From contig NIVC01003177.1 of NCBI GenBank assembly GCA_002269645.1, positions 1 to 64,000 on the forward strand: a stretch of 64,000 bases of DNA, in the 5' to 3' direction. How positions within the stretch are numbered: position 1 is the first letter of the stretch; the number at the start of each line of letters is the position of its first letter. Positions 25,056 to 49,744 of the stretch are shown here, in pieces. The translations under genes and the position numbers were made by a program. Under the pieces are notes generated by a model. The model saw only the letters and a list, made by a program, of their open reading frames with translations, searched no databases and was not told the origin of the DNA. This stretch comes from Macrostomum lignano. Lineage: Eukaryota.

Positions 25056-26015
25056 ATGAGCTTTGTCTGGCGTTTTTTCAAGAAGGAAGTGCAAAATGGA
25101 ATTTTACATGCCATTTGTCTGAAGCCTGATTGCAAGCGTATAATTGTCTGTAAAACTGCCTCTACAAGTGGCCCCTGTCGACATGTTGAGTCTTGCCATC
25201 CAGACTTTTTTATGGAATTGAAGTCTCTCGAATCCAATCATTCTAAAGCGAATAATCTAAAAAGGAATCAACCAAGCATGAGCACCTCAAGTGCAAATGA
25301 CATTAGAGATGGAGATGAGCCTGCTAAACTTGCTGACTCTGACTATTCCACTGGTTTGGATACTGACTCACAAAGTTGTCAAAAATTGGTCCAAAAGACC
25401 ATACTTGAAACTTTGGAAGCCACAAAGCCGTGGGACTATAGCTTTCCAAAGTCTAAGGCCTTGGATTTCGCTATTACACGAATGATGATCTTAGACAGCC
25501 AGCCTTTCTCAGTGGTATCGGATGAAGGATTTTGTGGAGTCTTGAAGGTTGCAGCTCCACGATATGTAGTCAAATCTGATCACTACCATCGCAAGCAAGT
25601 TGATGACGTGTTTGACAAAATGAAACAGGAGCTGCTTGGAATCCTGTCCACGATTCAACATGCTTCAGTGACTATTGACATATGGACAGAACAAAGCATC
25701 TCGCTAATGAGTCTTACACTACATGCCATCCGACCTGATCTCACTCGGTTTTCAACTGTCTTGGCCCTGCCTCAACTAACAGACAACCATACGGCTATAT
25801 TGATTGCGTCTACTCTGCAGGAGCTATTTCAAGAGTGGAACATTTCTGACAAAGTGATTGCTGTGATCACTGACAATGCCAGCAATATGGTGAAAGCCAA
25901 ACAGCTACTCAAAGACGATCATATCAGTGAACTTCTAAGTGGTGGGTGCATCGCCCACAAACTGAATCTTGTGGTGCAAGATGCACTCAAAGTGCAATCA
26001 TCTGTGGTCAATTAG
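25056..26015 (+). CDS. Truncated hAT (ZBED-type) transposase, N-terminal half
   Basis: BED finger (SFVWRFF..C..C..TS..RH..H), Hermes-like DNA-binding region (DSQPFSVVSDEGF), catalytic TIDIWT and TDNASNM, and CIAHKLNL (CxxH). Ends before the final catalytic E. Confidence 0.9.
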   Translation: MSFVWRFFKKEVQNGILHAICLKPDCKRIIVCKTASTSGPCRHVESCHPDFFMELKSLESNHSKANNLKRNQPSMSTSSANDIRDGDEPAKLADSDYSTGLDTDSQSCQKLVQKTILETLEATKPWDYSFPKSKALDFAITRMMILDSQPFSVVSDEGFCGVLKVAAPRYVVKSDHYHRKQVDDVFDKMKQELLGILSTIQHASVTIDIWTEQSISLMSLTLHAIRPDLTRFSTVLALPQLTDNHTAILIASTLQELFQEWNISDKVIAVITDNASNMVKAKQLLKDDHISELLSGGCIAHKLNLVVQDALKVQSSVVN

Positions 26016-26718: not shown

Positions 26719-28580
26719 CTGACAAGCAGGTTGATGATGCTGTTGCCTACTGTTTGATGCACGCCAACGATCCACTTAGGCGTCATAGCAAGATTGTCAA
26801 GTAGTTTTCTTCAGTAATTTGAATTTAACTTGACTTTTTTCAGGGTAGCCCTGCATCATTGAAATCCTGGAAATCCCCGGCAATTTTACTCATGGGCTGA
26901 TTTTTATCAGTTGAAATTTTCTATTAGATCATATTAATTTTAGCAATGAGGACATGTAGATAGAAGTAAAAGAAAATACTTAAAGTTCAGAAATTGAAGG
27001 GCGCTTGAAAAATTGCAAGGGTGCCTAAAAATGAAGTGCACCTCAAGAATTCAGGAGTGTGCCTCAAAAATTGAAGGGCACCAGGAAAATTGTAAAAGTT
27101 GAAGGGTGCCTGAAGAATTCGAAGGTGGGCGCCTCAAAAATCGAAGGGATTGAGATATCCTGGAAAATCCTTAGAATGAAAGTCCTTGAATGTCCAGGGA
27201 AACCCAGGGAATTTTTCTCCCGCAATGGCAGGGCTACTATGTTACTTTGAATTTGACTTGCCTTTAGTAAGTGCTTTAGTAATTGAATTAATGTGACTGT
27301 CTTTTCCATCTTACATTACACAACAATCATGTTACACCTCTTTACCATTTTAATACCCCTGAATGTCTTAATCCAAAATAAAGGATTATAAGAAATTACA
27401 TCTGTTATTGAGGACAAGGAGGTCACTTGGTGTTTGACATCCTCTATATAGAACTGTGAAATTGTTTCTGTGTCTTCAGCTTCAGTCTTAGTTTTTTTCG
27501 TAACAAAATTTTATCCCTTGAAAGAGCAGTAAAGTATACGAGTGCATCGCTGTAACTACGACAGAGACTCGCCAGGCGATATCGCGGGGCGATCTGCAGC
27601 GATATCGCACAGGCGGACAATGGCAACACTTTGGCAATAATTGGGCGGTCGCCCGGCAACAATTTTGCGAGTCGCCAGGCGATGTCGACGCGGTCTTTCC
27701 ACAAGGCTTTTGGTTATGTAGGCAATTTTCTCCAAACTTGCAGTTGCACCATTTGATCAAAGAAGAAATTTTCCCATGATGTGATGGTACGTTTGTCTTG
27801 GTTAAGGAATTATTCAATATTTGCTAAGAGTAGGCCTAAGACTAAGAGTAAGATAGTTGAAACAGGTCGATTCTTTAATAGTTCCAGACATTAGCTAATA
27901 ATAATATAGTAATAGACTAAGACTAGTGCCATAATATAAAATTTTTGCAGATTTTTTGACGATTTTTAAAGCAAGTTCAAATAAAACATAGTTTTAAATG
28001 AAACAAGTAAATGAAAAAATGAAAACCTGGTTGCCTGGTCGAGTGACTCAGCTTTAGATATAATAATAAGAATATATTCCTGTGGACTTGTGACACCTTC
28101 CTGAGTTACTGAGTATGGGTAAAGACAAAAAAATCCTATTATTTTTAGCTAGATAGATAGACACAGACAGACCATTTTTAATATATGATTATGGAAGATT
28201 TTGTATATTTAAATTTTGTATGTTTAAGATAAACGGCTATAGCTCCATGTGACGCACAATTTTCATAAATAAATAAACTTGAATAAAAAAATAAAGTCGT
28301 TTTATAGCAAGTATAAAAAATAGAATGAAGTACTTTTTTTAGGCCTATTATTGTCTTTTTGTAACATACGTATGACTAATATCCTTCTAATATTAAACGT
28401 AAGAAGTTATTTTGTTTTTAATACAGTTGTTTTTTAATTCTGTCAACATTTATTATAACGGCGGCAGACTGCTCTGCTCTGTTGCTAACATTTTACTGTG
28501 ACTTAGTCCGCTGTGTTGTTGACCGTTCTTGCATTCATTCCTTTCAATGGTTTCTTTTGGCTTCTTCACAGAGCCCGAAA

Positions 28581-28634
28581 ATTACGCGTAAAAAGAAAAG
28601 ACGTAGAAATCAAAGGGTTAATCAGTACCCTTTT
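28581..28634 (+). CDS. uORF (uCC) exon A: AUU-initiated ITRKKKRRRNQRVNQYPF
   Basis: gaaaATT context, basic N-terminus, perfect phase-0 donor TTT|GTAAGT, and a polypyrimidine acceptor ttcttcacag| at 28571. Confidence 0.7.
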
Positions 28635-29057
28635 GTAAGTTTGATTAAATTTTTGTTTGCTTATGTAGGGCCTATGATATGGTATATGGGCATTCTTTCG
28701 TTTTACGATCACCTAGCACTGTCCCTATGGGAGTCGGGAGTTTCGTTATACGATCCCCCCACACAGGACGAAAAATTGCTCTTGAAATCGAACTTCCAAA
28801 TGGGACCATTTCTAAGTGTGTCATTTTAACATAAAATCTTGTCTTATAGAAGTTAGAAGCCTGTCCTTATATTCACTTTTGTTATGCAATCATTTAAATG
28901 GTGAATTTATATGCAGATGATTGCAAGACGAAACCAAAAGAGCTTGTAGATTTTGACTTACAATCACACTAATAGTAAAATTGTATTGGAGGGATCGTAT
29001 GATAAAATGGTAGGAAATTGTTGCTATAGGCCTAATAGACCCATAGTGCGGAAGGAT

Positions 29058-30133
29058 GGCTACAGGTCAAAAGGGCGACAGATCAAAAGGGCGACAGTTA
29101 AAAGGGCGACAGTCAAAAGGGCGACAGTCAAAAGGGCAACAGTTACAGTGTATTTATATTGAAAATATGAGTTCCACGTACATTAAAAGTATTTGTTAAA
29201 AGCATAATGTGTAATGTCGCTGTTGCATGTTCGGTGTTGCCAATGATGCCGATGGCAGCCATCACACTGCAAGCCTTGCTGACGATGGCGGACCTCATTT
29301 TCACATACTATGCATGAGTTATCCATTTTAAAGAAATCAATATGCAGCCTGCTTCCATCAGCTTTCTACTAGCATAACTACATGTAGCTATATATGCATC
29401 CAACTAAACCAAATGGCTACATGTACACATTCAAGCTCAACACGGCCCTTACCTATCCCCTTATTCCCCCCAAAGAATTTTTTTATTAAGTAGTAGTAGT
29501 AGTAAGTTGGCTCAGGCAAGAAGCCTGTTTGGCCAGTATATTTCTGTGTATTAAAGATATTTTAGCATTAGTTGTTTAATTACACAGTTTTCACAGAATT
29601 TCACAGTCTGTTCACTGTTTAAATTTAAAAATTTCAACTTAAAAAAACAAAGATAATCAGTCCTCTATTTATTGTAACAAGTTGTATGAAAATGAAAATA
29701 TAAGACTATCGCAAAACATTATTTGACAATTGGTAATGCCAAAAAAAATTAAGATTGTAAAAATTGCGTTTGGTTCAATATGGAATTGCGCGCCAAAAAA
29801 AAGTCTCAATTTTCCGTCTTATATGCCAGATGCAAGAATTCCATGCTGGCTTATATGGTATAGTGATTTCAGTGAATGAAATAAATAAACCCCACTGATC
29901 TATGTTTCAATGTACAATGTATGAGCGTACATTAAATATTAGAACCCCATTCTAACATACAAGTACAAATTGTTAGCACAAAAATTGTTATTGCTAAGAT
30001 TCTAAGATTTTCTAAGAAACGAGGTTTCCCATCCTTCCACTTAAGTAGTTCTTGGTCTAATACCCTGTCACCCTTTTGACTGTCGCCCTTTTGACTGTCG
30101 CCCTTTTAACTGTCGCCCTTTTGATCGGTTGCC
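29058..30133. mobile_element. Non-autonomous TIR/foldback-like element with 15-bp subterminal tandem repeats
   Basis: Ends ggctacaggtc / gatcggttgcc. (AAAAGGGCGACAGTC)n occurs in inverted orientation at both ends. TSD ggaaggat (29050-29057, 30134-30141). Confidence 0.85.
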
Positions 30134-31463
30134 GGAAGGATTTCTGTATACAACGGAAGGTAAATTTTCATTTCGGCTTGTTGTACGACAGTACGACAGG
30201 GATTGGAAAATGGTACTAGTGTTGTACGACAGAGTTAGAGTTTAAGGAAGTGCTGTACGCCATAGTCAGAAAGGTGGCAAGTGCACGCGGGAATCAATTT
30301 ATGGAAAAATCCTTGGTGCACGCCAATGTACGCCAATTTTTTAAAACCCTTAACATGACGTTTCTGTTGCACGCCAAAAATCTTGAATACCAAAAATCAT
30401 GTACGCCTCATGTACGTGTGATTTGAATATTAACTGTATTGGATACTATTTTTAAATAAATTTTCTACACGTTAAACAAAGTTTATATAAAAAAAGGAAA
30501 TTCGCTACAAAGAACATAGTGAGTATCAAAAACTTTTTCTTCATATTTCAAGAAACAAATAAACTGAAAGTCTACAAGAGTCACAAAATAAGAGTGTTTA
30601 AAAGTTATTGGATATTTTAATTTTAATATAGGCTGCAGAGTGTAGGCTTGGCTGTAGGCTAGGCTGTAGCCTCAACTAGTTGGTTTAATCAATATTCAAA
30701 TTCAATTGTTCACGTTTAACTTTATATATTGTATATATATAGTGTATATATCTATATCTGACTTGTTGATATACTGTCAGTTTGTAATTGCACGCCAAGG
30801 TTACACACCAAGTAAAAAACTTGTATGCTGAAAATTTAGGCGTGGCTTGAGACCCCTATTTGCACGCCAACTTTGCACGCCAAAATTTTAGCGTGGCTTG
30901 TGCACAAGGGAAAATTCCCGCGTGTAGGCCACCTTCCTGAGTATGGGCTGTACAACAAAAATAGTGGCACTTACATATGTGGGTAGGTGCGGGAAATTCT
31001 TGATATTGCGTTTTTTTAATATGCAAAGTAAAACAACAGATATATTGTACTTTTCTGCTTGCAATGTCAAGTATAGTTTTGCGCCAATAAAATTGAATTT
31101 AAGAGTTTGTACAAATATAATACGGATAATTTAAATTACCCTTTGAGTGGAAAAGTGCAACTATTGAATTTTTACTTCTTTGCTTCAACGCAATACGTTA
31201 ACAACGACGTTATGAGTTAGTTATGAGACTACGAGTATCTGGTACTGGTGTCCGATTGTCCATCAAAGGAATACTAACTATGTCTATACTTCATGTATGA
31301 GTCGTATGACATTGACAAGTGTACGACAGACAGACATGTAACATGTTTACATGTACGACAGTGTACAACATAGCGCCCCCCAAAAATTAGCGATGTACGA
31401 CATGTACGACAGGCGATCCCTGTGTACGACAGAGATTTCTGGCGTATACCCGTCCTCATACAT

Positions 31464-31619
31464 GCGCAACTTTGGGATTCACTCGGCCGTTTCTATTGGC
31501 AACACACGCATGTAAGTCGCTATTGGACAGAACAGTAGTCACGTGACTGCTCTCAGCCAATAGCGACTTACATGCGTGTGTTGCCAATAGAGGCGGCCGG
31601 GTGAATCCCAAGGTTGCGC
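31464..31619. repeat. 156-bp near-perfect palindrome (hairpin MITE-like)
   Basis: 63-bp arms with about 4 mismatches; the centre contains AGTCACGTGACT. Confidence 0.9.
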
Positions 31620-33015
31620 CCAAGCATGCCCGTCCTTCCGGACCATGGTAATAGACATTTCAACTAAACAATCAATTGCAGCCTCTAATATGTCCGCAAA
31701 CCAAAAGCCACCCGGCTCTTTTTACATGGCTCTTTTTGCACGCCTTTTCAATCACCGCCACTGCCCTATGCCCCCCCCCCCTCACTTTTGTCATATGATC
31801 ATCCCTCGGTATAGGCCTAACATTGCCTAACATAGGCCTAACTTTGCCAGGGATATAATATGTAATCCATTCACTTTTGTCATACAATCCCTCTCATACA
31901 ATTCTACCAATGTGGTGATCGTAATTTGAAACCTACAAGCTCTTTCGGATTTGGTTTTATCTTGCAATCATCTGCATATAACTTTACCATTTAAATGGTT
32001 GTATGACGAAAGTGAAAATAAGCTACGTGCTTTCATAACTAATACTACGCCCACAATCCTCAAGTTGACTGAAAAGTGAGTTGCAGTAATGAATTAGGTT
32101 GACTGGAAAGTGAGTTGCAATGATTTTGTTCGTAGAAAATAAATGTGAAATGTACTTTTTGATAAACTAGAGTGTCTTTTCGACTCTTTTTTAATGGGGA
32201 TTGTAAGAAGAAACTTGACCTGCTCAGGGATCGTAAAACAAAAGAATGCTGGTATATAGTGGGTGTAGGCCCTATCTGTATATAAAACTAGGCCCCAGTC
32301 TAAGACTAAATAATATAACATGTTTGCAGTTTTTGGTGATTTTGTGGCTTTCAGTTTGTGGACATTGTAGAGGCTGAACTTGTGTGTTTAATTGAAACAT
32401 TGATTAGGCCTATACCAACAATTTCCTATCACTTCAAAATGATAGGCTAGGAAAAGCCGCAAAACTGCAAACTAATTCTGGGCACCTCTCCCTCACTTTT
32501 GTCTTATAATCCCCCCTAGTTAAATGGATGTATGTTTTGTAGGGTGATCATAATATGAAAGTGAATTTGGTTTTGTCTTATGATCACAGATCATCTACAA
32601 ATTTCACTAGACACCATTTAAATGATTATATAACAAAGTCAAAAGTGAATATAAGCTACACATTTCTACAAGACACAAGATTTGATATTACTATAAAAAT
32701 ACTTTAAAAAATGGTCCTATTTTGAAATTTGATTTTAAGAGCAATTTTAACTTAACCTTTTCATTTTCTATTGGGGATCATATAATAAAAGTCCGAATTC
32801 TCATAGGATAGTGCTATGTGATTATAAAACAAAAGAATGCCGACATGGTTGTGGGCCATGTCTATGATTATGCTAGGTGCATGCCTGAATAAAAATTGAA
32901 AAGTTACAAATGCATGCCAAAAAATTTAGGTTTACACCTACATTTTCAAATTGGTCAATAGACAAAATGACTATTTTGTGGTGGGTGTATTAACTGTTTT
33001 AGTATTCTTATATGA

Positions 33016-33680
33016 CATCTCTACCTATAAAAATCAAAACTCTGTCTGTCTGTGGACAAATTACTTCGCTATGGACTCCCAAACCGCTCAACCAAATTAC
33101 ACCAAACTTTACACCCACCCTAAACTTACTACGGAGAATGTCTTAGGCTACCTTTTAATTTCCTAGACTCAAGTCTTCCTACCTAAAAGTACAAGAAACT
33201 GCTCAAAATGCGCGATTTTTTCACTAAATCCTCCATAGCGCCGCTCCACTTCTACCGATTCTCTTCAAATTTGACACAGATAATCTTTAACTATTTTGGC
33301 ACAATCATGTAAAATTTCGAGTATCAAAGTTAATCCTGAGCGGTGCTGTGCGCTTTTAAAGTTAGGCTGTTTTTTTCAGCGTAGCAACCACCCCAACCTC
33401 CGCCCGCCTGCCTCTCTTACCCGATCTGGGCCCAGATGTGTAAAAGGGTTTCAAAATTGACTAACTTTCAGCTGCCATAAGTTTGCTTCACGTAAAGCGA
33501 TTGACTTCAAACTTGACACAATTCTTCATTGACCTATTCTCTGTCTAAATGTAAAGTTTCAACTCTGTAACTCAACCGAAAAAGAAACTGTAAGCATGTG
33601 AAGTTTGTCTGCTTTTTCTGTTGTTTGTGCCACTCACTCACTCATTCCCCAGAGCCAGACGAAGGGTCAGGCGATAGGAC
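33016..33680 (+). mobile_element. Helitron/Helentron-associated (Lep1/DINE-like) non-autonomous element; boundaries approximate
   Basis: Starts ctacctataaaaatcaaaactctgtctgtctgt..aaaccgctcaaccaaatt..caccaaactt, a 5' pattern typical of such elements. Confidence 0.4.
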
Positions 33681-34168
33681 TGAATGTACATAGCAAATGT
33701 ACAGTGTTTTGGAATAACTTTATTTATAGCCTTCTCTGCACCCCGAGAGTGGAGAGGCTTCGTTTAGCCATAACAGTTTAGTGAGAAATTCTAACCACTG
33801 CCCTCCCCTCTGTATTGGCAAACTCTGCAGCAGTTTAACAGTGGATGGCAATTGGCAAATCGAAAAAAAATCCAGCATGGTTTGTAAAAGCGAAAGATTT
33901 ATGAAAAGGCGATGCCATGCAATGAAATACAACCCTACTAAATTAGGCACACCGCACACCATGGAAATTTTAAGTTTTAAAAGTACTCTAAAATTTAAAT
34001 GGCCTCCTAAGAAATGTGTATTTCCTTGGTTGTTAGACTGATGCAGACTGCAGTGGAGCTGAAGATACACAAATTCCTTTCAGGGCTGCAAATTGGCAAG
34101 AAAGATGACGTGATCAAAGCATGAGAACAACCATGAGAGTAGTACGTCCCACAAACTGGCTTTCGAAG

Positions 34169-35074
34169 CAGGGATCGGCAGACTTTTACTTCAAAAGCCA
34201 GATAAAGAATCCAGCTTATGTGCAGGCCAGATGAGAGTGGAAAGGAGAAGGAATAGACTAATTAGTATTAGAAGAGAGGAGAGGCGAGAGGGGGATAAGA
34301 GAAAACATGGAAGATAAGAGGAGAGACAAGTGGTGAGGAGAGAGCAGAGAAGAAGGGAGGAAGAAGCGAGAGGAGGGGAGAAAGGAGGGAGAGGAAAGAG
34401 TAAATGTAAGAAGAGGGGAGAGATGAGACAGAGGATCGATGAGAGGAAAGTAGAGAAGAGTGAGAAGAGAGTAGAGATGAGAGAGCAGAAAGAAGATGAC
34501 AGAGGGTCAAGAGGAGGAGAGGAGAGGAGAGAGTAGAAAGGATAGAGAAGAGAGGAGATAAGAGGGGGAGAGAGGAGTGAGAAGAGAAGAGATAGAGATA
34601 AGAGAGGGGTGTAAGAAGAGGGGAGAAAGGAGAGATGAGATTGTAGAGATGAGACAGATTAAAGGAGAGATGAGAGAGTAAAGATGAGAGATGAAAAAGG
34701 TGAGAGGAGAGTGCAGAGAGACGAGAGAAGACAAGAGAGGGAGACAGTATAGAAGAGGGAAGAGAAGAGAAGAGGAGAGGAGAAAGGAGAAAGGAAAGAG
34801 AGGAGTCAGAAGAGGTGAAAGAGAAGAGTACAGAGGAGATAAGTGAGAGAACGTATAAGAGAGTAAAGATGACAGATGAGAGAGCAGAGATGAGGGTGAA
34901 CAGACGAGAGATGGGAGAGTAGAGAGAACAGAGGAGAGAGAAGAGAGAAGAGATTACAGAGACTAGAGGAGAGAGGAGAGACAGGGAGGGAGAAGAGGAA
35001 ATAGGAGAATGAAGAGGGGAGAGAGTAGAGAGGAGAAGAGAGATGGGAGAGGAGAGATAAGAGAGAGAGAGAGG

Positions 35075-35171
<97 letters not shown>

Positions 35172-35676
35172 AGGGAGAGAGAGAGAGGGAGGGAGGGAGA
35201 GAGAGGGAGGGGGAACAGAGAGAAATGAGAAGAGATAAGAGAGAAAAGATAAAAGAGGAGAAAGGAAAGATGAGAGAGAAACTAGACGAGAGAGAAAAGA
35301 GGTGAGGGAAGAGAATAGAGAAGAGGGGAGAAGGGAGAGAGGAGAGAGGAAAGAAGAGATGAGAGGAGAGAGAGAGGAAAGAGTAAAGAGGAGAGATGAG
35401 AGAGTAGAGGAGAGAGTTAAGAGAAAAGAGAAAAGAATAGAGAGGAGAAGGGAGAGACGAGAAAAGAGGGGGAGAGAGGAGAGGGGAGAGAAAAGAAGAG
35501 ACAAGAAATGAGATAAGAGAGATGAAAGAGAAGAGAGATAAGGGAAGAGAGGAGAGAGGAGAGAGGAGAGACGAGGGATGAGAGAGAAGAAAGGAAACAG
35601 AAGAGACGATAGAAATTTTAAAGGATCCAAGGGACGTAGGGAGAGTCAGGGAGAGGCCAGAGTTTGCCAATACATG
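34169..35676. mobile_element. hAT-Charlie (MER58-like) MITE ends enclosing about 1.4 kb of GA-rich low-complexity DNA
   Basis: Left cagggatcggcagactttt..aaaagccagata and right ggccagagtttgccaatacatg. Flanks tttcgaag/ttttagag match only partially. Confidence 0.5.
34270..35620. repeat. Polypurine (GA-rich) low-complexity tract with a perfect (GA)n core near 35070-35165
   Basis: Read directly from the sequence. Confidence 0.95.
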
Positions 35677-36270
35677 TTTTAGAGTCAGACAGACATTTTG
35701 CCTGACATTCTGCGCAGTACCCCAGCCAACAGTATCAATTTTTTCCTCAAATTCTAATTTTACACGAATGTGCTCCATTTTATGTCTACCTCAATCCTAC
35801 TAACTATTAACAAGTTTTGTTTTGTGCATGGCCTTAGATTTCAGAATGCATGCAAAAGTAGTTCCGGGGATTGAAATTCCCCGGGTTCAAAATCCGCGGG
35901 TTTCAACAGCTTGTAGTATATATTAAATGATAAGTTAATTCATTTGTGTATAATTTAGTTTCAAAGATTCAAAGCAAACAAAAAATTTTATTGTTTATTT
36001 ATACATTGCATGTAATACAAGATGGACCACATAATGCACCTGATTTAAAACATTAATAATTTTTGTTATTTGTAACCAATGTTGACAAAATTTTAATTCA
36101 ACATTGCCACATGTATAGCATTATATTTGCAAAATTTACACATGCAAGCAAGCACATTGTGTATAAGATCTTTTTGGCTAATTATTTGGTTTATGATTTA
36201 TCTTTTGCCAATGATATTTATAGTAAAAAAAGTTGATACCCATGAAAATTTGTTTAAATGATATATTATA

Positions 36271-36645
36271 AGGGGCCGTAGCCCAGCAGTAGCGTAGCTG
36301 CTCTGGTGTGCCAGCGACCCAGGCTCGATTCCAAGTGCAGTCACATTAATCTGAGGCTGAATTGGAATCTCGGCTTGGCTCTGCTCGTGCAATTAACGGC
36401 CTTGAGAGCCAACCTCCCAAGGCGCAGCAGTGAAGTGTACATGCCTAACGATAATATAAAGTTAGGGCCGCTGTACACTCCTGTGTGAGTATGTGCCTGC
36501 GTACGTATCCGCGCGCTTGTATGCCTGCTCAGGGGAGTTGGCAAAATGGGCAGTAAAGCCTCTCACCAGTTGTGTGCCCATGTCGCTTAAAGTGTGCCAG
36601 GATGCATACAACCCCCCTGCCTCTAATAAAAAAAGATATATTATA
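36271..36645 (+). mobile_element. Full-length tRNA-derived SINE
   Basis: Head ggggccgtagcccagcagtag (A box) and ggctcgattcc (B box), the shared central block, and an A-rich tail aataaaaaaaga. Confidence 0.8.
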
Positions 36646-37599
36646 AGCTTAAAAACCAAAAAGCTTTTGCTTAAAAATGAACTTTTCAATCTTTTTTCCA
36701 CTTAATACTAATTCTTTCACCTGATTCTATGTATTGCACACTTAGGTGTACATGTGCACTTTTTTATTAGGAGTCTTGCTATGTATATCTAAGTCCTAAA
36801 TTTTGTCATGCAGGGCCAATGCATGCCCAAATTTTTGGGTCTATACTATATGATTTGGAGTGTAGGTTGTAGGAAGGTTTCAACCCACAAGGAATTTAAA
36901 GGAATTTTTGGCAAAAGTCAATAATAGCAAAGAATACTTAAAATAAATGTTTTCACTTTCAATTCAGGGAGGGCTCTAAATCCATAAGGTTAGGGACTCA
37001 AACAACCTTTTCATATTATATAGCAATATACACATTGTGATTAGGATAGTGTGGACTATGGAGCCTATAGGCTTAAGTTCAGAAAAATAAAGCTCAGATA
37101 AATAAATAAAGGCAAAAGGAAAAGAAGTAGAAGAAGTCAGGCAGCTTTCAGTACCTAATCACCTTGGGAACCAACTGACAAGCAAAGAAGATCTCAGTAA
37201 GAATTAGATTTTTTATTACTTTAGTTACTTTATTAACATTAGAAGAAGAGATATGAAAGAGAAGAGACAAGCAGGAGGAAAAAAAGTCAAAGGGAGAAAG
37301 AAAAGAAGGAAGTGGTGAGAGGCAAGAGCAGAGATGAGAGGATCGAAGGGCAAACTAAGACTTGATATGTATCATGCATCACCATTAAAGGGCCTGTCAA
37401 CTTAAGCTCATAAAGTGGAGCCCGAGTGACCTTTTTACACAAATGATTCATCATTTGCTCATGGTGACCAGGACACCAGGAAGCTGAAAGTTTGGCAAAA
37501 AAGAGACAAAAATAGGGAAGAACAAGCAAGGGGATTATTTACAAGTCCAATTTTCGTTGCTTTTTGCCAAACTCAGTGTCTTGGTGTTGCTGAGAGCAG

Positions 37600-38276
37600 A
37601 CAACAACAACAAGAAAATACGCTGTCAGGATGGCAAAAGTCAGCGTCACAGGGCACGCTTCATGGCTTGGGTGCGAACAAAGGCCCCGCCACTGGCAGTG
37701 TCCGGGGCGCCGGCGTCAGTCAGCAGACAGTCGACGTAACGCCGAGTTCGCGCTTGACCTCGCCGGTTAGGGTGCCTGCAGCGTGAGCAGCAGCACCTCC
37801 TGCACCGGCTGTGGGCAGTACGACTCGGCGCGGATGAGATGGCCTGCGAGCTGGAGTCGCCGACGGCGCAGTAGATCGCTTGGACGTGGCAGGCCAGCGC
37901 GGCGATAGAGTGCCTCGTTGTTGACTCGCTCGACGCCGTTGTTGAAGGCGGCGCGCAGCAGGCCAGCGTGCGCCGCATCGACTTGCTGTTCGAGTGAGTC
38001 CGTCAGCGTCCAGGTCTCGGCGTTGTAGAGCAGGACGGTCTCGATTACCGCCTGGAACAGCGCCGCCCTCTTCTGCGTGTTGACCACCAGGCCGACGCTC
38101 GCCGCAACGGCAACTAGCCTGTCCAGCTGCCGTTGGGCGCCCTCGACGGTCGAGGACAGCAAGGCGAGGTCGTCGGCGTAGCCAAGCACGCTGAGCCGCT
38201 TCTCCGGTTGACGTCGACCCACGCGTCGCCGCAGCAGAAAGCCGTCGTCGTCGGTAGGAAGAGCAGTCCGCATCAC
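37600..38276 (-). mobile_element. 5'-truncated non-LTR retrotransposon (RTE/L2-like RT C-terminus) with an internal deletion
   Basis: GYADDLALL RT motif; VNTQK is joined directly to RAALFQAVIETVLLYNAETWTL; RLQLAGHLIR; (TTG)n tail near 37600. Confidence 0.85.
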
Positions 38277-38433
38277 TGAGAGCAGAATAAAATATTATTT
38301 GTGTACAGAGGTTACTCGGGCTTAAGTTGACAGACCCTTTTTGTTCTAATGATTGTCCTATAAAATATATTAATCAGATAGGTGATTATGATCAGTTAAT
38401 TCACAAATAAATCTACTATAATTATTTATACAG

Positions 38434-38526
38434 GCGGTCAAAGACCCCGAACCACCCGATCCAAATCGTCTGCTGACTGATCACAACCGAGAACCGCCCT
38501 GGGACCCGGACCCAACAACGGGTTAG
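38434..38526 (+). CDS. uORF (uCC) exon B: AVKDPEPPDPNRLLTDHNREPPWDPDPTTG*
   Basis: Phase 0 after acceptor tttatacag|. GAA CCG CCC TGG GAC CCG at 38491-38508 reads EPPWDP. TAG at 38524-38526. The unspliced upstream frame is closed by TAA at 38419-38421. Confidence 0.8.
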   Translation, partial: AVKDPEPPDPNRLLTDHNREPPWDPDPTTG

Positions 38527-38651
38527 AGCTGGCATCGGCGGCGGCTCTGCAAAAGACAGCGAAATTAAGTAACGCCAATTCAAGTCTGACAGCGGAGAAA
38601 GCACAACTTACTAATTCAGAGAGAGCTTTGAGAGAGCAACAGATTGAAACA

Positions 38652-38927
38652 ATGAAGACTCTAGATCAGCCGATGCCTCGGGTATTTGCTAGCCAGATTG
38701 AAGCGTGCGCTTGGCTGTCCGATCAACTGCCAGCTGATTGCCAATCCGCTTCCCTGTTAGATCTTGCTGCCCTGTGGCGGGCTAGAGCCAGTCTGTTAGC
38801 TAGCTATGGCGATATTGTTGCCACTAAGCTGACAACTAGGATTGATGCTCACGCTGCCTCGGGACTGACTGGGGCACTGGCTCAGCTAGGCTGCGGTGGT
38901 AGAGTGCGAGCTAGGAATGATCTGACG
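38652..38927 (+). CDS. ODC-fold pseudoenzyme (antizyme-inhibitor-like), coding exon 1 (92 codons)
   Basis: First AUG of the predicted mRNA (aacaATGa). SASLLDLAAL ~ AFYVADLGDI; LAQLGCGGRVRARNDL ~ LAATGTGFDCASKTEI. Phase-0 donor ACG|gtgagg. Confidence 0.8.
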
Positions 38928-39039
38928 GTGAGGCTGCTACACATAGTAGCTTTTGATTGTAGGTATTTTGTTATTTAAATTACATATTTCAGCTTGGCTT
39001 CTGTTATTGTAGATTAACAGTAAGAATATGGAAAAGAGG

Positions 39040-39475
39040 AAAGAATGTAGGGGATAGTGGGTAAAGGGAGATAAGAGGGGGAGTATGTAAGATAAAATGG
39101 GGAGAAGGGAGATAAGAAGGGGAAGGTAGATAAGAAGAGATAAGAAGGGGAAGGTAGATAAGAGATGGAGAAGAGAGATAAGAGGAGAAAAGGTAGATAA
39201 GAGAGGAAGAAGGGAGATAAGAGAGGAAGAAGGGAGATAAGAGAGGAAGAAGGGAGATAAGAGAGGGAGAAGGGAAATAAGAGGAGAAAAGGTAGATAAG
39301 AGAGGAAGAAGGAAGATAAGGAGGCGTAAAGGGAGATAAGGGCGTAAAGGGAGATAAGAGGGGGAAGGTAGATAAGAGATGGAGAAGAGAGATAAGAGGA
39401 GAAAAGGTACATAAGAGAGGAAGAAGGGAGATAAGAGAGGAAGAAGGGAGATAAGGAGGCGAGAAGGGAGACAGA
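39040..39475. repeat. GA-rich degenerate minisatellite in the ODC-like intron
   Basis: Recurring gagataagagaggaagaagg units. Confidence 0.9.
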
Positions 39476-39588
39476 GTGGACGATGAATACAATCCAGTAT
39501 ATGAATTAAATGGCTAAAGGGAGGAGAAGGCAACAGCTATTAGCCTCTGCAATGTACAATTTACTCACGCTAATGCCTGATCCCACAG

Positions 39589-40520
39589 AGCGCCATCTCA
39601 TCGGGTCTAACTGGCCCCAATCTACTATTGGACAATCCGTGCAAAACTCGTTCGTTAATTAATCTAGCTAAGCGTCACAGCGTTGCTATGACAACATTTG
39701 ACAACGAAACGGAAGCTGCCCGACTAGCGGAGCAATGGCCCGGCGTGTCGGCCCTGCTGCTGGTCAGGCCGGAAGGCGCCGACTCGCTGGGAGATGCCAC
39801 CCTTGGCGCCGAGCCAGGCACAGTTGCTAGCGTACTGGCCGCAGCTAAGAGTTTCGGTCTAAACGTTGTCGGCGTGTCTGTAGTTGACTGTGCCGTTGGT
39901 GCCGCAGGTGTGCTCGAGTCTGCTCGAGTCGCTATCAGTGCTGGCCGCCTGCTTGGTCATCGGATGTCGCTGCTAGATATCGGCACTAATAGTTTTCTAA
40001 CCGCCGAGTTGAACTATCAGCTGTTTGAGTTTATTGTCGATAATAAGATTGACGCATTGATGACTGATTCGACTGACGCTCTGCTAAGCCGATCGATTGT
40101 TTTAGCTACCCGACTGGTTGCTAAGCAACGGATTGAGGACGATGCTGAAAACGGCAACAGCAACAAAGGAGACTGGCGTTGCACAGTCGGCGATTCAGCC
40201 TTTGGCGGTTTTTCCGGTTGGCGACTTCAAGTTGGCATCGACAATGTGTCGATGTCGGTAGCCGCTCCGGAGCTGCTTGGAGTTGTTCGTTCGGCTAGCG
40301 ACTTTTGCGACGCAGCGGCATCCGTTGAGAGCGATGGCGGTGGCAACGTCTGGATGTACGGCGTTACAGATTCGACTGAGGATCGGCTTGGCTGTCTGCG
40401 ACAGTTCGGCTTGGACTGCGACATTGGCGACTGGCTGCTCTGGTCCGGTCTGGGAGCCCAGGATAGCCGGGCTGCTAGAAAGGCTAACGGTCTGGCTGAG
40501 CCTGAGTTCCGGTGCTTCCT
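39589..40520 (+). CDS. ODC-fold pseudoenzyme, coding exon 2
   Basis: Acceptor ccacag|AGC, in frame with the 39628-40524 ORF. ODC motifs NPCK, MTTFDNE, LNVVGVS, LLDIG and GDWLL..LGA are present. Donor CT|gtgagt at 40520, or read-through stop TGA at 40522-40524. Confidence 0.88.
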
Positions 40521-40830: not shown

Positions 40831-42179
40831 TGAGTTAAAACATTGCTCAGCTTATGTACACCGTACATCTCTATTACATTAAATAAGCCTATCGAGACTC
40901 AGGTACTCATTTTAAGAACTTCAGTTGGCTTCAGATATCCGTCAGAACCTAACTTGCCTAAGCTCACTTCTTTCGACATTCTGCCATAGAATACCCATTT
41001 GAAGGTTTACAGGTATTTTTCAACCTTTCTGCACACGGGGCATGTAATACAAGCTACTACAATTGTAAGGATTTAGTTAATGTTACAAAGATAGAAGTTT
41101 TTATCTTGTAGCGAACATTTGGCTTGTCGTAATAAATTATTATTACAGATAAATCTGCCCTGGGGCCTAGGGCTAAAAGTGTTTTTGTAATTTTCTCAGT
41201 ACTGGCCAACAAAGTCACCAGTTTACCGCGTGCAACCCTCTCGCGTTGCAGTTTTAGCAGTGCTGCTAAATACAAATGTGCCAACCCAACAGTTGAAAGC
41301 TTACTGGGGTGGAATTTTCTATTACATTAATTTATGCAACAGCTTGTTTCAGCCTTTAACCTGTGGAACCTGGAGCTGTATAGGCAGATAAGAACTTATA
41401 GAGGTTAGCGGGTTTCTCTATTAGCACAAGAGGTCTATTAAATTGCTTAATATCAAACCGACAACTGGTGGATTAACCATTCAGGTTTCTTGGAAATGAA
41501 TTTATTGATAATATTACATTAAGCTTTGGAACTTTCTAAAAAATCTTCAGAAGAATTTAAAGAATCACTTAGAAAACTTAAGGAAAGGTCTAAGAAGGTC
41601 TAAGGTCTAAGAAAGCTTTGTTAAAATTTCGAAACTTTCTAAGACAGCTTCGCAGGAGTTTAGAAACTTTCTAAGAAGGCTTCGTGGTAGTTAAGGAACT
41701 TTCTAAGAAAGCTTTAGGGAAGGTTCGGAACTTTCTAAGAAAGCTTCGTGGAAGTTTAGCAACTTTACTGTTCCTTGAGAAGTGAATCAGCCACTTCTCA
41801 AACTAAATTTAAAAAATCAGGATTTTTTTTCTTATCTAAACTAGTTCGGAATGAATATTTCTTAGCCATTTAATATATTAAGCTTAACTAGAAAAATCCT
41901 GTTTTAGCTGAGTGTATTCTATTACTCGGACTATAATCAGCTGACTACAAACCGGTGCAAAGGCTTGCACATTTCAAGGCTAGACTGTGTCCACGGAGTA
42001 GACAAATATGAGACAAATAATACGCGACCAGTTTAAAGTGGAAACAGCAGAAAGCTGCTGAATACACAGTACCCCCAGCTCTCAGTGTGTGCTGGGATAG
42101 AGTCTACTGTTGTAGTATATTAAAGTACATTTTAGCCCCGTTTATCATATTTCCAGTTTCTCTTTGCTTGCGCTCGTGG

Positions 42180-43130
42180 CTTCCGCTCCCTCCATCTGCT
42201 TCCTCTCCCTACATCTGCTTCCTCTCCCTCCATCTGCTTCCTCTCCCTCCATCTGCTTCCTCTCCCTCCATCTGCTTCCACTCCCTCCATCTGCTTCCTC
42301 TCCCTCCATCTGCTTCCACTCCCTCCATCTGCTTCCTCTCCCTCCATCTGCTTCCACTCCCTCTATCTGCTTCCTCTCCCTACATCTGCTTCCACTCCCT
42401 CCATCTGTTTCCACTCCCTCCATCTGTTTCCACTCCCTCCATCTGCTTCCTCTCCCTCCATCTGCTTCCTCTCCCTACATCTGCTTCCACTTCCTCCATC
42501 TGCTTCCCCTCCCTCCATCTGCTTCCTCTCCCTACATCTGCTTCCACTTCCTCCATCTGCTTCCCCTCCCTCCATCTGCTTCCTCTCCCTCCATCTGCTT
42601 CCTCTCCCTCCATCTGCTTCCACTCCCTCCATCTGCTTCCACTCCCTCCATCTGCTTCCTCTCCCTCCATCTGCTTCCACTCCCTCCATCTGCTTCCTCT
42701 CCCTCCATCTGCTTCCACTCCCTCCATCTGCTTCCTCTCCCTACATCTGCTTCCTCTCCCTCCATCTGCTTCCCCTCCCTCCATCTGCTTCCTCTCCCTA
42801 CATCTGCTTCCACTTCCTCCATCTGCTTCCCCTCCCTCCATCTGCTTCCTCTCCCTCCATCTGCTTCCTCTCCCTACATCTGCTTCCACTTCCTCCATCT
42901 GCTTCCGCTCCCTCCCTCTGCTTCCTCTCCCTCCATCTGCTTCCTCTCCCTCTCTTCTTCCTCTTCCTCTCTCTGCTTCCTCTCCCTCCATCTGCTTCCT
43001 CTCCCTCCCTTCTTCCTCTTCCTCTCTCTGCTTCCTCTCCCTCTCTTCTTCCTCTTCCTCTCTCTGCTTCCTCTCCCTCCATCTGCTTCCTCTCCCTCCC
43101 TTCTTCCTCTTCCTCTCTCTGCTTCCTCTC
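42180..43130. repeat. Pyrimidine-rich 19-bp minisatellite (TCCCTCCATCTGCTTCCTC)
   Basis: Direct tandem units; source of the spurious long ORFs here. Confidence 0.95.
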
Positions 43131-43230
43131 CCTTTCAAATTCTTCAATCGAGTTGCAAAGCAGCTAATGCGATATTCTACTATAAGTAGCTCAAATAGAA
43201 TATCTAGTCGTTTTTTCTTTCATTTATCAG

Positions 43231-43441
43231 GCAATCGGGCCGCGAGCCAACGGCGCCCATCGGCAGCGGCGGAAGCGCCAAAGCTAGCAGCAGCGCCCCA
43301 GCCGTCCGCAGCCGATGCCGGACCCGCCACTCGTCGAGCTGCTGCTACAGCGAGACCGTGTCAATCAACGCTTCGTCTGTTGGCTCTGGCGAGCAGTCGT
43401 CTACTGCCGATCGAGAAATCTGCTCAGTGATGCTCTCCTAA
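43231..43441 (+). CDS. Probable terminal coding exon of the ODC-like gene (Ser-rich tail)
   Basis: Acceptor ttttttctttcatttatcag|. A phase-2 join gives L-QSGREPTAPIGSGG...SSTADREICSVMLS* (TAA 43439-43441). GC-rich island. Confidence 0.55.
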
Positions 43442-45757: not shown

Positions 45758-46128
45758 TCAAGCCTTAGCCAGGTCCCTGGCAACCATCTCGGCAGTGATT
45801 GGGTGCATGAACTGCCTCCTTGACTTGAAGTGCTCCTCAGCCTTGGCCTTGGCAGCCGGCCAACTGAACAGCTCCCTGTACAGCGGTCGGACAAACTTCA
45901 TTCGGCCAACTGTGGCCAGAAATTTCAGACCCTCGTCCACAGCGTCCGGATAGCGGTGCTTAGCGGCCAGTCTCAGCCAGCGGAATTTCACTTCGCTGCA
46001 CTTGACCGCCTGCAGACTGTAGATCTGCGCCATTCTGGCCAGCTTAGCGTGCGGCAGAGGCTGCTCACAGTGCAGCAGCTCGTCTAGCATTAGAATCTTC
46101 TGCTTTGTGCTCAGCTGGGCGAATGCGT
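45758..46128 (-). CDS. LTA4H: Leukotriene A4 hydrolase / M1 aminopeptidase, exon 7 (last)
   Basis: Acceptor aaacag|AC. SEVKFRWLRL, GRMKFVRPLY and MHPITAEMVARDL match the LTA4H C-terminus. Confidence 0.93.
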
Positions 46129-46214
46129 CTGTTTTTATATAGGGAGGAAATTGTCTGGCAATATGCTTTGATACTACTGCTAGTAACTTAATGTCTACTA
46201 CTCAGGAATTCCCT

Positions 46215-46880: not shown

Positions 46881-46968
46881 AATGATAACACTTTAAGAAT
46901 TCGCCCACAACTAGACTAGTCAAGAAAAGGAATACCCCAAAGAGTAATTCGGGGAATTCCTTCCTCAC

Positions 46969-47384: not shown

Positions 47385-47479
47385 CTACACAGAAACGAAT
47401 TTTTCTAAGAAATTTAATGACAACGTTTTCATGTTTAAAATTGTAGAAAAATCTGGCAAAATTCCCGGAATTCGATATT

Positions 47480-48480: not shown

Positions 48481-48597
48481 TATGTGATGGTAGAATTCGG
48501 TAATTATAACCCAAAATTATTATGATAAAATTTCTCAATCTTATTTTCAATTGAGAAACTAATCAGGAATCTAGAAAGAGCCGAGCCCATCGCTTAC

Positions 48598-48941: not shown

Positions 48942-48984
48942 CTGGTACGAGGAGGTGGACTACTTTTAATACCAATCCTATAAA

Positions 48985-49743: not shown

Positions 49744-49744
<1 letters not shown>

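What the first reader, a model, noticed from the sequence alone, without database searches (positions are those of the whole stretch)
28572..38654. Spliced, AUU-initiated PPW uORF (polyamine-sensing uCC) upstream of an ODC-like pseudoenzyme
Seen: the donor at 28634 (TTT|GTAAGT) and the acceptor at 38434 (tttatacag|GCG) are both phase 0. Joining them gives a 48-codon ORF from AUU 28581 (gaaaAUU): ITRKKKRRRNQRVNQYPF|AVKDPEPPDPNRLLTDHNREPPWDPDPTTG*. Its stop is 125 nt before the main AUG (38652), and the 281-nt predicted leader has no AUG. Known: AZIN1 and many ODC-homologue mRNAs carry an upstream conserved coding region of about 50 codons that starts at a near-cognate codon (AUU in AZIN1), has a basic N-terminus and ends in EPPW. 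High polyamines antagonise eIF5A at PPW, ribosomes queue, uORF initiation rises and the main ORF is repressed. Inferred: the same switch operates here. It is missed by ORF callers because it lacks an AUG and is split by a 9.8-kb transposon-filled intron. Local features: extra Pro motifs (DPEPPDP, WDPDP) and a tail longer than the vertebrate PPWEPS* recalled.
Basis: partly seen in the sequence, partly recalled or inferred. Interest (0 to 1): 0.93.

Follow-up and report, generated by a model that had tools for sequence, protein, structure and literature searches.

The report
Flatworm polyamine-sensor uORF before ODC-like gene
The 5' leader of a Macrostomum lignano gene for a catalytically dead ornithine-decarboxylase relative carries a spliced, non-AUG upstream reading frame that is conserved in two related species and resembles the human AZIN1 polyamine-sensing uORF, so it is a real but expected new member of a known regulatory family.

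Summary
AUU 28581, donor TTT|GTAAGT (28634/28635), acceptor ACAG|GCG (38433/38434) and stop 38524-38526 give a 48-codon ORF ending 125 nt before ATG 38652. The window is Macrostomum lignano contig NIVC01003177.1.

- **Splicing:** RNA-derived contigs from two related species carry both halves joined at exactly the predicted junction.
- **Conservation:** the frame is conserved (dN/dS 0.15-0.37). Conservation collapses right after the uORF stop.
- **Copies:** all three M. lignano gene copies keep the 5' exon, with introns of about 3.3, 6.4 and 9.8 kb.
- **Homology:** the peptide aligns with the published human AZIN1 uCC peptide, I[PT]xKK(K)RRR at the start and D[FH]Nx[ED]PPW[ED]P at the end (z about 5).
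- **Main ORF:** an ODC homologue that has lost every catalytic motif checked.

So this is a genuine animal uCC. Its polyamine/eIF5A queuing function is inferred, not tested.

Corrections:
- A conserved AUG (28547) opens a 14-codon uORF overlapping the AUU, so the leader is probably not AUG-free.
- The animal Pro-Ser-stop ending is absent.

New: the main frame stays open back to a Kozak-optimal CUG inside the PPW codons, and one relative has no main AUG.

The parts
28547..28591 (+). Conserved AUG uORF, MVSFGFFTEPENYA*, 14 codons plus TAA. It is out of frame with the uCC and overlaps the AUU start. The first 16 nt, TCAATGGTTTCTTTTG (from 28544), are invariant in three species.
   Evidence: The length is the same (14 codons plus stop) in the window, L001 and L006. 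It is the only ATG between 28400 and 28640.
28557..28559 (+). UUG in the uCC frame, 8 codons 5' of the AUU, conserved in three species. It is a possible alternative start, in a poor context (c at -3).
   Evidence: and direct reading of the sequence. Between spB and spC the codons from UUG to AUU change mostly synonymously or conservatively in the uCC frame (LFLSPAPK versus LFLTPGSK).
28581..28634 (+). uCC part 1: AUU start (28581-28583, context ccgaaaAUUa) plus 17 codons, ITRKKKRRRNQRVNQYPF. It ends at the phase-0 donor TTT|GTAAGT.
   Evidence: The N-terminus matches human AZIN1 IPPKKRRR.
28635..38433 (+). Intron in the 5' leader, 9,799 nt, GTAAGT...ACAG. It contains tandem repeats and a reverse-transcriptase fragment. 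The same intron is about 6.4 kb and about 3.3 kb in the two other gene copies.
38434..38526 (+). uCC part 2: AVKDPEPPDPNRLLTDHNREPPWDPDPTTG plus TAG (38524-38526). The conserved blocks are DPEPPD (38443-38460) and DHNREPPWDPDP (38479-38514).
   Evidence: The sequence is identical in all three M. lignano copies.
38494..38502 (+). Pro-Pro-Trp codons CCG CCC TGG, the predicted polyamine/eIF5A-sensitive stall site. They are codons 39-41 of the uCC; the Trp codon starts 120 nt after the AUU.
   Evidence: The nucleotides are invariant in three species. The motif's function comes from PMC11058473 and PMC9082881.
38499..38501 (+). CUG in the main-ORF frame, embedded in the PPW codons, in the context accgccCUGg (G at -3, G at +4). 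There is no stop between it and ATG 38652 (51 codons).
   Evidence: The same arrangement is present in L001 and L006.
38527..38651 (+). 125-nt spacer between the uCC stop and the main AUG. It is not conserved in sequence between species, but it is stop-free in the main frame.
38652..38927 (+). Main ORF coding exon 1 (92 codons) of the ODC-like pseudoenzyme.
   Evidence: the three exons translate exactly to P0004 (PAA52833.1/PAA68180.1, 472 aa).
39589..40520 (+). Main ORF coding exon 2, the Orn_Arg_deC_N-like core.
43231..43441 (+). Main ORF coding exon 3. It encodes a Cys-rich C-terminal extension that ends in the conserved ...ICSVMLS*.

Best explanation
This is a genuine upstream conserved coding region (uCC) of the animal ODC-homologue family. 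It sits in the 5' leader of the Macrostomum lignano gene Mlig005245, whose product is an ODC-fold pseudoenzyme and a likely functional analogue of antizyme inhibitor.

**Shown.** The leader is made by cis-splicing a small 5' exon (ending at 28634) to the exon that starts at 38434. The join creates a 48-codon frame with no AUG. The frame begins at a conserved AUU with A at -3, has a basic N-terminus, and carries the conserved blocks DPxPPD and DHNx[ED]PPWDPDP.

**Inferred by homology with AZIN1.**
- At low polyamine levels, most scanning 40S subunits pass the AUU and reach the main start.
- At high polyamine levels, eIF5A cannot rescue peptide-bond formation at Pro-Pro-Trp, so the few ribosomes translating the uCC stall there.
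- Following 40S and 80S particles queue back over the roughly 120 nt to the AUU. This raises initiation at the AUU and blocks access to the main ORF.

**Local additions whose role is unknown.**
- A conserved 14-codon AUG uORF overlaps the AUU.
- The tail after PPW is longer (7-12 codons) and does not end in Pro-Ser-stop.
- The main reading frame is open from a CUG inside the PPW codons.
For: - **Sequence and joined ORF:**
- **Organism and gene:** (UniRef, M. lignano; PAA52833/PAA68180/PAA93341; window = NIVC01003177.1; exact CDS).
- **Junction in mRNA of relatives:** L001-L003 read ...RVNLYPF|AVKDPEPP... and L005/L006 read ...RVNLYPS|ADRDPQPP....
- **Where conservation lies:** it starts at TCAATGG, peaks in exon 1 and around PPW, and is lost after the uCC stop.
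- **Selection:** dN/dS is 0.15, 0.27 and 0.37. By my own count on the alignment, uCC peptide identity is about 85% (spB) and about 60% (spC); the main protein scored 52% and 46%.
- **Gene copies:** the 5' exon is present in all three M. lignano copies, with introns of three lengths. Exon 2 is identical in all three, while their shared intron sequence is 86-99% identical.
- **Homology to human AZIN1 uCC:** the peptide from PMC9648851 aligns with z = 4.4-5.5, and 0-2 of 5000 shuffles reach the observed score.
- **Splice motifs:** the splice sites fit the M. lignano cis motifs GT[G/A]AG and CAG (PMC8629364).
- **ODC homology:** Pfam PF02784 at 4.5e-12, and PDB ODC and AZIN1 at about 1e-12.
- **Catalytic motifs lost in all three species:**
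- **Mechanism in AZIN1:** PMC2811004, PMC11058473 and PMC9082881.
Against: - No M. lignano transcript, ribosome-profiling or reporter data were available, so the junction in this species and the whole functional model are inferred.
- Only three species could be compared.
- The animal uCC hallmark of Pro-Ser immediately before the stop (PMC2811004) is absent.
- A conserved out-of-frame AUG 34 nt upstream would divert some ribosomes past the AUU. A conserved in-frame UUG 8 codons upstream means the true start is not settled.
- +4 after the AUU is A or C, not G.
- The open main frame reaching back into the uCC, and the lack of a main AUG in one relative, suggest the leader does more than the AZIN1 model requires.
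Confidence: 0.78

Rival explanations
1. In M. lignano the acceptor at 38434 is used mainly for spliced-leader trans-splicing rather than cis-splicing to the exon at 28.6 kb. The 35-nt SL ends in AUG. That AUG would be in frame and would give an AUG-initiated 31-codon uORF, M-AVKDPEPP...PPWDPDPTTG*.
For: - The M. lignano SL is CGGTCTCTTACTGCGAAGACTCAATTTATTGCATG, and about 30% of genes are trans-spliced (PMC8629364).
- The acceptor is phase 0, so the SL AUG would be in frame (direct reading of the sequence).
- Three UniProt models start exactly at AVKD.
Against: - Transcripts of both relatives carry the cis exon, not an SL.
- The 5' exon, its AUU and its GTAAGT donor are retained in all three M. 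lignano copies.
- An upstream cis donor disfavours trans-splicing (PMC8629364).
- ATACAG fits the trans-acceptor motif [T/C]TNCAG only partly.
- The N-terminus encoded by the cis exon is the part homologous to human IPPKKRRR.
Confidence: 0.08
2. The conserved frame is real, but it is not (or not only) a separate repressive uORF. Translation enters the main frame inside or just after the uCC. It could start at the CUG embedded in PPW or at another near-cognate codon, or, in spC, by termination-reinitiation at the GUGA overlap. The product would be an N-terminally extended pseudoenzyme. The PPW stall would then act by occupying that start site.
For: - The main frame is -1 relative to the uCC and stop-free from just 5' of PPW to the conserved domain in all three species. 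The other frames have stops in Mlig and spB.
- Shuffle probabilities of being stop-free are 0.08, 0.13 and 0.23.
- PPW-to-domain distances differ by 36 and 3 nt, both multiples of 3, although the spacer cannot be aligned.
- spC has no in-frame AUG before the conserved RVFASRAEACAWH; its only nearby AUGs are out of frame.
- The CUG context is accgccCUGg.
Against: - The pattern was noticed post hoc, in only three species.
- The spacer peptide is not conserved.
- The one substitution inside the overlap (CCG->CCC in spB) is synonymous in the uCC frame and non-synonymous in the main frame.
- Mlig and spB have ordinary main AUGs.
- Any Pro-Trp pair creates an NUG in that frame, so the CUG may be a by-product.
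Confidence: 0.12
3. The second half of the frame is simply the coding N-terminus of the ODC-like protein, as in UniProt models A0A1I8GZH3, A0A1I8GEF0 and A0A1I8H2L5.
For: Those three models begin AVKDPEPPDPNRLLTDHNREPPWDPDPTT and continue into the main ORF.
Against: - The three models join the frames in three different ways: an invented intron G|GTTAGA...CTCTAG| of about 140 nt, a 5-nt skip, and a larger skip.
- The transcript contigs of relatives keep the stop codon and the spacer unspliced.
- The NCBI models start at ATG 38652.
Confidence: 0.02

Closest known systems
AZIN1 (antizyme inhibitor 1) uCC of vertebrates (Ivanov et al. 2008 PNAS; Ivanov et al. 2018 Mol Cell; summarised in PMC2811004, PMC11058473 and PMC9082881)
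   Same: - It lies in the leader of an ODC-fold pseudoenzyme.
- It has no AUG and starts at a conserved AUU.
- Its length is about 50 codons (48-55 here, 52 in human).
- The N-terminus I-P/T-x-K-K-(K)-R-R-R matches.
- The C-terminal D-[FH]-N-x-[ED]-P-P-W-[ED]-P matches.
- PPW lies about 40-47 codons after the AUU.
- The stop lies upstream of the main AUG, without overlapping it.
   Different: - The tail after PPW is 7-12 codons (DPDPTTG*, DPDPTTGRRYC*, DPDPNRSPRG*) instead of EPS*.
- There is an extra conserved DPxPPD block.
- A conserved out-of-frame AUG uORF overlaps the AUU.
- The uCC is split by a 3.3-9.8 kb intron.
- The main frame is open back into the uCC.
- The host gene is not an orthologue of vertebrate AZIN1, which arose in early vertebrates (PMC2811004).
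uCCs of invertebrate ODC homologues (animals of six phyla, Ivanov et al. 2008, as summarised in PMC2811004)
   Same: - It is a near-cognate-initiated conserved coding region in the leader of an ODC homologue.
- It has adjacent prolines near the C-terminus.
- Conservation is concentrated at the C-terminal end.
   Different: - The Pro-Ser-stop ending reported for those phyla is absent.
- I could not check whether Platyhelminthes were among the six phyla, because the primary paper is not held.
- Here the main ORF has lost its catalytic residues.
Polyamine-responsive uORFs of AMD1/AdoMetDC (MAGDIS) and the plant AdoMetDC short uORF
   Same: The logic is the same: a uORF-encoded peptide senses polyamines through a ribosome stall and represses a polyamine-pathway main ORF.
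   Different: Those uORFs start at AUG, are very short, stall at termination, and are unrelated in sequence.

Membership tests
Animal ODC-homologue uCC (AZIN1-type) | Lies in the 5' leader of an mRNA that encodes an ODC homologue. | tested here: met
   The main ORF hits Pfam PF02784 and PDB ODC/AZIN1. The uCC lies upstream of the main ORF in transcript contigs of two relatives and in the gene model.
Animal ODC-homologue uCC (AZIN1-type) | Has no AUG start, and a conserved in-frame near-cognate codon (AUU in AZIN1) in a good context. | tested here: met
   AUU is conserved in three species within cgaaaAUU, with A at -3. There is no in-frame AUG. Whether initiation occurs at this codon was not tested. 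A conserved in-frame UUG lies 8 codons upstream.
Animal ODC-homologue uCC (AZIN1-type) | The amino-acid sequence is conserved, with purifying selection strongest near the C-terminus. | tested here: met
   dN/dS is 0.15-0.37. DHNx[ED]PPWDPDP and I[TP]RKKKRRR are conserved in all three species. Conservation is lost after the stop.
Animal ODC-homologue uCC (AZIN1-type) | Has two adjacent prolines followed by Trp (PPW) near the C-terminus. | tested here: met
   PPW lies at codons 39-41 (Mlig) and 42-44 (spB, spC).
Animal ODC-homologue uCC (AZIN1-type) | Ends in Pro-Ser immediately before the stop (animals of six phyla, PMC2811004). | tested here: not met
   The endings are ...DPDPTTG*...TTGRRYC* and ...NRSPRG*. 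Only the [ED]-P after the W is shared.
Animal ODC-homologue uCC (AZIN1-type) | Shows detectable sequence similarity to a bona fide member (the human AZIN1 uCC peptide). | tested here: met
   Global alignment gives z = 4.4-5.5, with 0-2 of 5000 shuffles reaching the observed score. The peptide comes from PMC9648851.
Animal ODC-homologue uCC (AZIN1-type) | Represses the main ORF in a way that depends on polyamines, eIF5A and PPW. | not testable with these tools
   Testing this needs reporters or Ribo-seq.
Antizyme inhibitor (functional class) | Has the ODC fold but lacks the PLP lysine and catalytic residues. | tested here: met
   AVKCN->TRIDA, HVGSG->VDCAV, GGGF->GTNSF, EPGRY->DSTDA, GPTCDS->GVTDST and GAYT->GAQD. 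The motifs are likewise replaced in both relatives.
Antizyme inhibitor (functional class) | Binds antizyme and releases ODC. | not testable with these tools
   No binding data exist, and the antizyme gene is not in the window.
Vertebrate AZIN1 orthologue group | Is orthologous to AZIN1 rather than to ODC. | tested here: inconclusive
   PDB scores to ODC (49.6 bits) and AZIN1 (48.4 bits) are equal. In 1.84 billion representatives only two orthologues appear, and the next hit scores 149 bits. AZIN1 is said to have arisen in early vertebrates (PMC2811004), so an independent origin is more likely.
SL trans-spliced leader with SL-donated AUG | The SL sequence sits at the mRNA 5' end, joined at the acceptor. 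| tested here: not met
   This could be tested only in relatives. Their contigs carry the cis exon at this junction, with no SL. M. lignano reads were not available.

The most novel reading that the evidence does not exclude
The Pro-Pro-Trp stall codons double as a start site for the main protein. CCC-UGG creates a CUG in the main-ORF frame, in the optimal context accgccCUGg. That frame stays open through an otherwise unconserved spacer in all three species, and one species has no main AUG at all. If so, some or all of the pseudoenzyme is made by non-AUG initiation at or just after the sensor. In spC it might instead arise by reinitiation at a GUGA stop/start overlap. A polyamine-stalled ribosome would then repress by sitting directly on the start codon, not only by queuing.
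Probability: 0.2. Interest if true: 0.7.

Novelty: new member of a known kind. Interest (0 to 1): 0.45.

Why it matters
- **Reach of the sensor:** it extends the AZIN1-type polyamine sensor to a free-living flatworm, a regeneration and stem-cell model in which transgenesis is available. The N-terminal I-P/T-x-KK(K)RRR and the C-terminal DxNxEPPW[ED]P blocks are shared between flatworm and human.
- **Possible convergence:** a uCC here controls an ODC-derived pseudoenzyme that probably lost catalysis independently of vertebrate AZIN1. If the protein binds antizyme, this would be a convergent antizyme inhibitor under the ancestral translational switch.
- **Annotation:** three UniProt/WormBase models of this gene family fuse the uCC to the coding sequence and should be corrected.
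- **New test material:** the local oddities (overlapping AUG uORF, long post-PPW tail, open main frame with a CUG inside PPW, a relative without a main AUG) offer natural variants for testing what the queuing mechanism really requires.

Tried and rejected
- **Protein search with exon 1 alone:** no hits.
- **Profile search with three orthologues:** no further species.
- **Exhaustive HMMER search of 1.84 billion representatives:** only the same three orthologues. None of the other proteins returned has an N-terminal PPW fusion.
- **P0009:** it is a paralogous pseudoenzyme in species B, but its contig is truncated at the 5' end, so it is uninformative.
- **Two metagenome DNA scans with conserved uCC patterns:** 0 hits.
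- **Primary papers:** Ivanov 2008 PNAS and Ivanov 2018 Mol Cell are not held. I could not check which six phyla were covered or the published invertebrate uCC alignment.
- **Species identity:** a literature search for the SRA run ids gave nothing. Species B and C remain unnamed, and calling them Macrostomum relatives is an inference.
- **M. lignano transcripts:** no RNA-derived contig carrying P0004 or P0005 is on record.
- **Rejected readings:**
  - Chance ORF.
  - The UniProt fused-CDS reading.
  - Ribosomal frameshifting from the uCC into the main frame; no slippery heptamer was seen by eye at PPW, and this was not formally tested.

Full report
**1. Observation**

The coordinates are exact.
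- ATT 28581-28583 sits in ccgaaaATTa.
- Eighteen codons (ITRKKKRRRNQRVNQYPF) end at 28634, before GTAAGT.
- After tttatacag the frame resumes at 38434: AVKDPEPPDPNRLLTDHNREPPWDPDPTTG, then TAG at 38524-38526.
- The main ATG is at 38652, 125 nt after the stop.
- The joined stretch from 28572 has no ATG.

**2. What the locus is**

- The full-length downstream protein retrieved a 100%-identical Macrostomum lignano UniRef entry and two homologues from Logan assemblies.
- Cluster members include the NCBI proteins PAA52833.1/PAA68180.1 and PAA93341.1 (BOX15_Mlig005245g1-3, 472 aa).
- Their genomic loci show that the window is NIVC01003177.1:1-64000. L009 equals window 28652-53441.
- CDS exons 38652-38927, 39589-40520 and 43231-43441 translate exactly to P0004.
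- The protein is an ODC homologue (Pfam PF02784, 4.5e-12; human ODC and AZIN1 structures at about 1e-12).
- In M. lignano and both relatives every catalytic motif checked is replaced: AVKCN->TRIDA, HVGSG->VDCAV, GGGF->GTNSF, EPGRY->DSTDA, GPTCDS->GVTDST, GAYT->GAQD. 'ODC-like pseudoenzyme' is therefore correct.

**3. Is the spliced uORF real?**

The decisive evidence comes from contigs of about 1.9 kb from two other species.
- Species B is L001-L004 (runs SRR28338163-66; main protein 52% identical).
- Species C is L005/L006 (runs SRR30276804 and SRR30276812; main protein 46% identical).
- These contigs carry the whole coding sequence without the two CDS introns, and L005 starts with an Illumina adapter remnant. 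I therefore read them as mRNA-derived.

In their leaders the two halves are contiguous, joined exactly at the predicted junction and in frame:
- spB: ITRKKKRRRSQRVNLYPF|AVKDPEPPDLPDPRQPLSDHNSEPPWDPDPTTGRRYC*
- spC: IPRKKKRRRSQRVNLYPS|ADRDPQPPDLVTGASKGSDHNRDPPWDPDPNRSPRG*

Supporting points:
- **Leader alignment.** Conservation starts abruptly at TCAATGGTTTCTTTTG. It is near-complete through cgaaaATTnCGCGTAAAAAGAAAAGACG and again around GAyCACAAC...CCGCCCTGGGACCC. It disappears right after the uCC stop.
- **Selection.** Nei-Gojobori dN/dS is 0.15 (Mlig-spB), 0.27 (Mlig-spC) and 0.37 (spB-spC). By my count on that alignment the peptide is about 85% and about 60% identical, against 52% and 46% for the main protein.
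- **Within M. lignano.** All three gene copies keep the 5' exon, its AUU and its GTAAGT donor. The intron is about 3.3 kb in L008, about 6.4 kb in L007 and 9.8 kb in the window. The 491-nt second exon is identical in all three copies.
- **Splice sites.** Both fit the published M. lignano cis motifs (PMC8629364).

**4. Is it a member of the AZIN1-type uCC family?**

PMC9648851 prints the human AZIN1 uCC peptide: IPPKKRRRFTRLFGPLSHGELSDQVYNYPEGLGEVLYREQFDFNAEPPWEPS.
- The flatworm peptides align to it with z = 4.4-5.5, and 0-2 of 5000 shuffles reach the observed score.
- The similarity lies at both ends. The start is I-P/T-x-K-K-(K)-R-R-R. The end is DFNAEPPWEP versus DHNREPPWDP.
- PPW is at codons 47-49 in human and at 39-41 or 42-44 here.
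- One family feature is not met. The Pro-Ser-stop ending reported for animals of six phyla (PMC2811004) is absent. Here 7-12 poorly conserved codons follow the Trp.
- All three flatworm peptides also share a DPxPPD block and a PDP-rich WDPDP. I recall such motifs as eIF5A-dependent; I did not check this in the literature.

**5. Mechanism**

*Shown:* the anatomy, the conservation and the homology.

*Inferred from AZIN1* (PMC11058473, PMC9082881):
1. There is leaky scanning past the AUU at low polyamine levels.
2. At high polyamine levels the ribosome stalls at PPW because eIF5A function is impaired.
3. Ribosomes queue back over the roughly 120 nt to the AUU.
4. uCC initiation rises and the main ORF is repressed.

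Repressing an antizyme-inhibitor-like protein when polyamines are high would be homeostatic. Antizyme binding by this protein is untested.

**6. Corrections and additions**

(a) *A conserved upstream AUG.* ATG 28547 lies in the context tcaAUGg. It opens a 14-codon uORF (MVSFGFFTEPENYA*), out of frame with the uCC. Its stop is TAA 28589-28591, 6 nt past the AUU. It has the same length in all three species, and the transcript contigs of relatives start 29-52 nt upstream of it. The leader is therefore probably not AUG-free. Ribosomes using this AUG would bypass the AUU.

(b) *A possible alternative start.* A conserved UUG (28557) lies in the uCC frame, 8 codons before the AUU. Homology of I1 with the human start favours the AUU.

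(c) *An open main frame.* The main frame is -1 relative to the uCC and is stop-free from just 5' of PPW to the conserved domain in all three species.
- Shuffle probabilities of being stop-free are 0.08, 0.13 and 0.23.
- Spacer lengths differ by multiples of 3 although the spacer cannot be aligned.
- CCC-UGG creates an in-frame CUG in the context accgccCUGg (38499-38501).
- Species C has no in-frame AUG before the conserved RVFASRAEACAWH. Its uCC stop overlaps a main-frame GUG (GGGUGACG).
- This suggests non-AUG entry into the main frame. It was noticed post hoc and rests on three species.

(d) *Mis-annotated models.* Three UniProt models (A0A1I8GZH3, A0A1I8GEF0, A0A1I8H2L5) start at AVKD and fuse the uCC to the main ORF by three different invented joins. 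The transcripts of relatives keep the stop codon and the spacer.

**7. Rivals**

- *SL trans-splicing at 38434.* It would put the SL's terminal AUG in frame (SL sequence from PMC8629364). It cannot be excluded as a minor form. However, the conserved cis exon, whose product is the part homologous to the human N-terminus, argues against it as the main form.
- *Chance.* This is excluded by the evidence in section 3.

**8. Novelty**

This is a new member of a known kind. The uCC family and its mechanism are published, and uCCs are known in ODC homologues of several animal phyla. I found no paper on a flatworm uCC, but the primary 2008 paper could not be read. Only three orthologues exist in the 1.84-billion-protein library.

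Noticed in passing
window 28544-28591: TCAATGGTTTCTTTTG is invariant at the nucleotide level in three species. It contains the only ATG of the leader, which opens a 14-codon uORF of conserved length overlapping the AUU start of the uCC. It is unclear whether this is a translated uORF, part of the uCC frame (QWFLL), or a promoter or RNA element.
   Followed up: partly
window 38499-38651; L001 215-343; L006 192-371: The main-ORF frame is open from a CUG inside the PPW codons (accgccCUGg) to the main start in all three species. Spacer lengths differ by multiples of 3 even though the sequence is not conserved.
   Followed up: partly
L005/L006 (L006 225-372): Species C has no in-frame AUG before the conserved N-terminal region of the pseudoenzyme. 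The uCC stop UGA overlaps a main-frame GUG (GUGA). Two out-of-frame AUGs (328, 334) open a 40-codon ORF that overlaps the main ORF. The sequence is identical in two independent runs.
   Followed up: partly
window 38434-38664 (UniProt A0A1I8GZH3, A0A1I8GEF0, A0A1I8H2L5): Three database gene models fuse the second uCC exon to the main ORF through three different artificial joins. The NCBI models (PAA52833, PAA68180, PAA93341) start at the AUG.
   Followed up: yes
window 43231-43441: The pseudoenzyme has a C-terminal extension of about 70 aa that the aligned canonical ODCs (P0013, P0020, P0026) lack. It has a Cys-rich HSSSCC stretch and an invariant ending I-C(C)-S-V-[ML]-L-S in three species, which might be a lipidation or targeting signal.
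   Followed up: no
window 28635-38433 versus L007 and L008: The leader intron differs between the three M. lignano copies (9.8, 6.4 and 3.3 kb). The window-specific insertions are at about 29057-30133 and about 33018-35914 (tandem, strongly purine-skewed repeats). A weak RVT_1 fragment lies at 37770-38276 on the minus strand.
   Followed up: partly
window 54436-57357 (+): A GC-rich (0.57-0.59) LTR-type retroelement with a zinc knuckle, an aspartic protease, RVT_1 (8.6e-16) and an integrase core (8.3e-11). The reading frames are split between several ORFs.
   Followed up: partly
window 25056-26012 (+), 11463-11837 (-), 58183-58581 (+), 45758-53340 (-): Neighbouring features are an ORF with a DUF659 match just below Pfam's gathering score (I read it as hAT-transposase-like, from memory), a Janus/Ocnus (phosphohistidine-phosphatase-like) gene, a PWWP-domain exon, and a leukotriene-A4-hydrolase/peptidase M1 gene on the minus strand (from the called genes of L009).
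   Followed up: partly
L010 (SRR28338166): Species B has a second, more divergent ODC-like pseudoenzyme (P0009, 354 aa, 147 bits to the profile). Its contig is truncated at the 5' end, so it is unknown whether it also has a uCC.
   Followed up: partly
window 39000-39480, 42020-43200, 50880-52300, 59377-59640: Long tandem repeats fill the CDS introns and flanks, for example GGGAGATAAGAG-like units and SIYL-coding repeats. They explain the extreme GC and AT skews in the composition profile.
   Followed up: no
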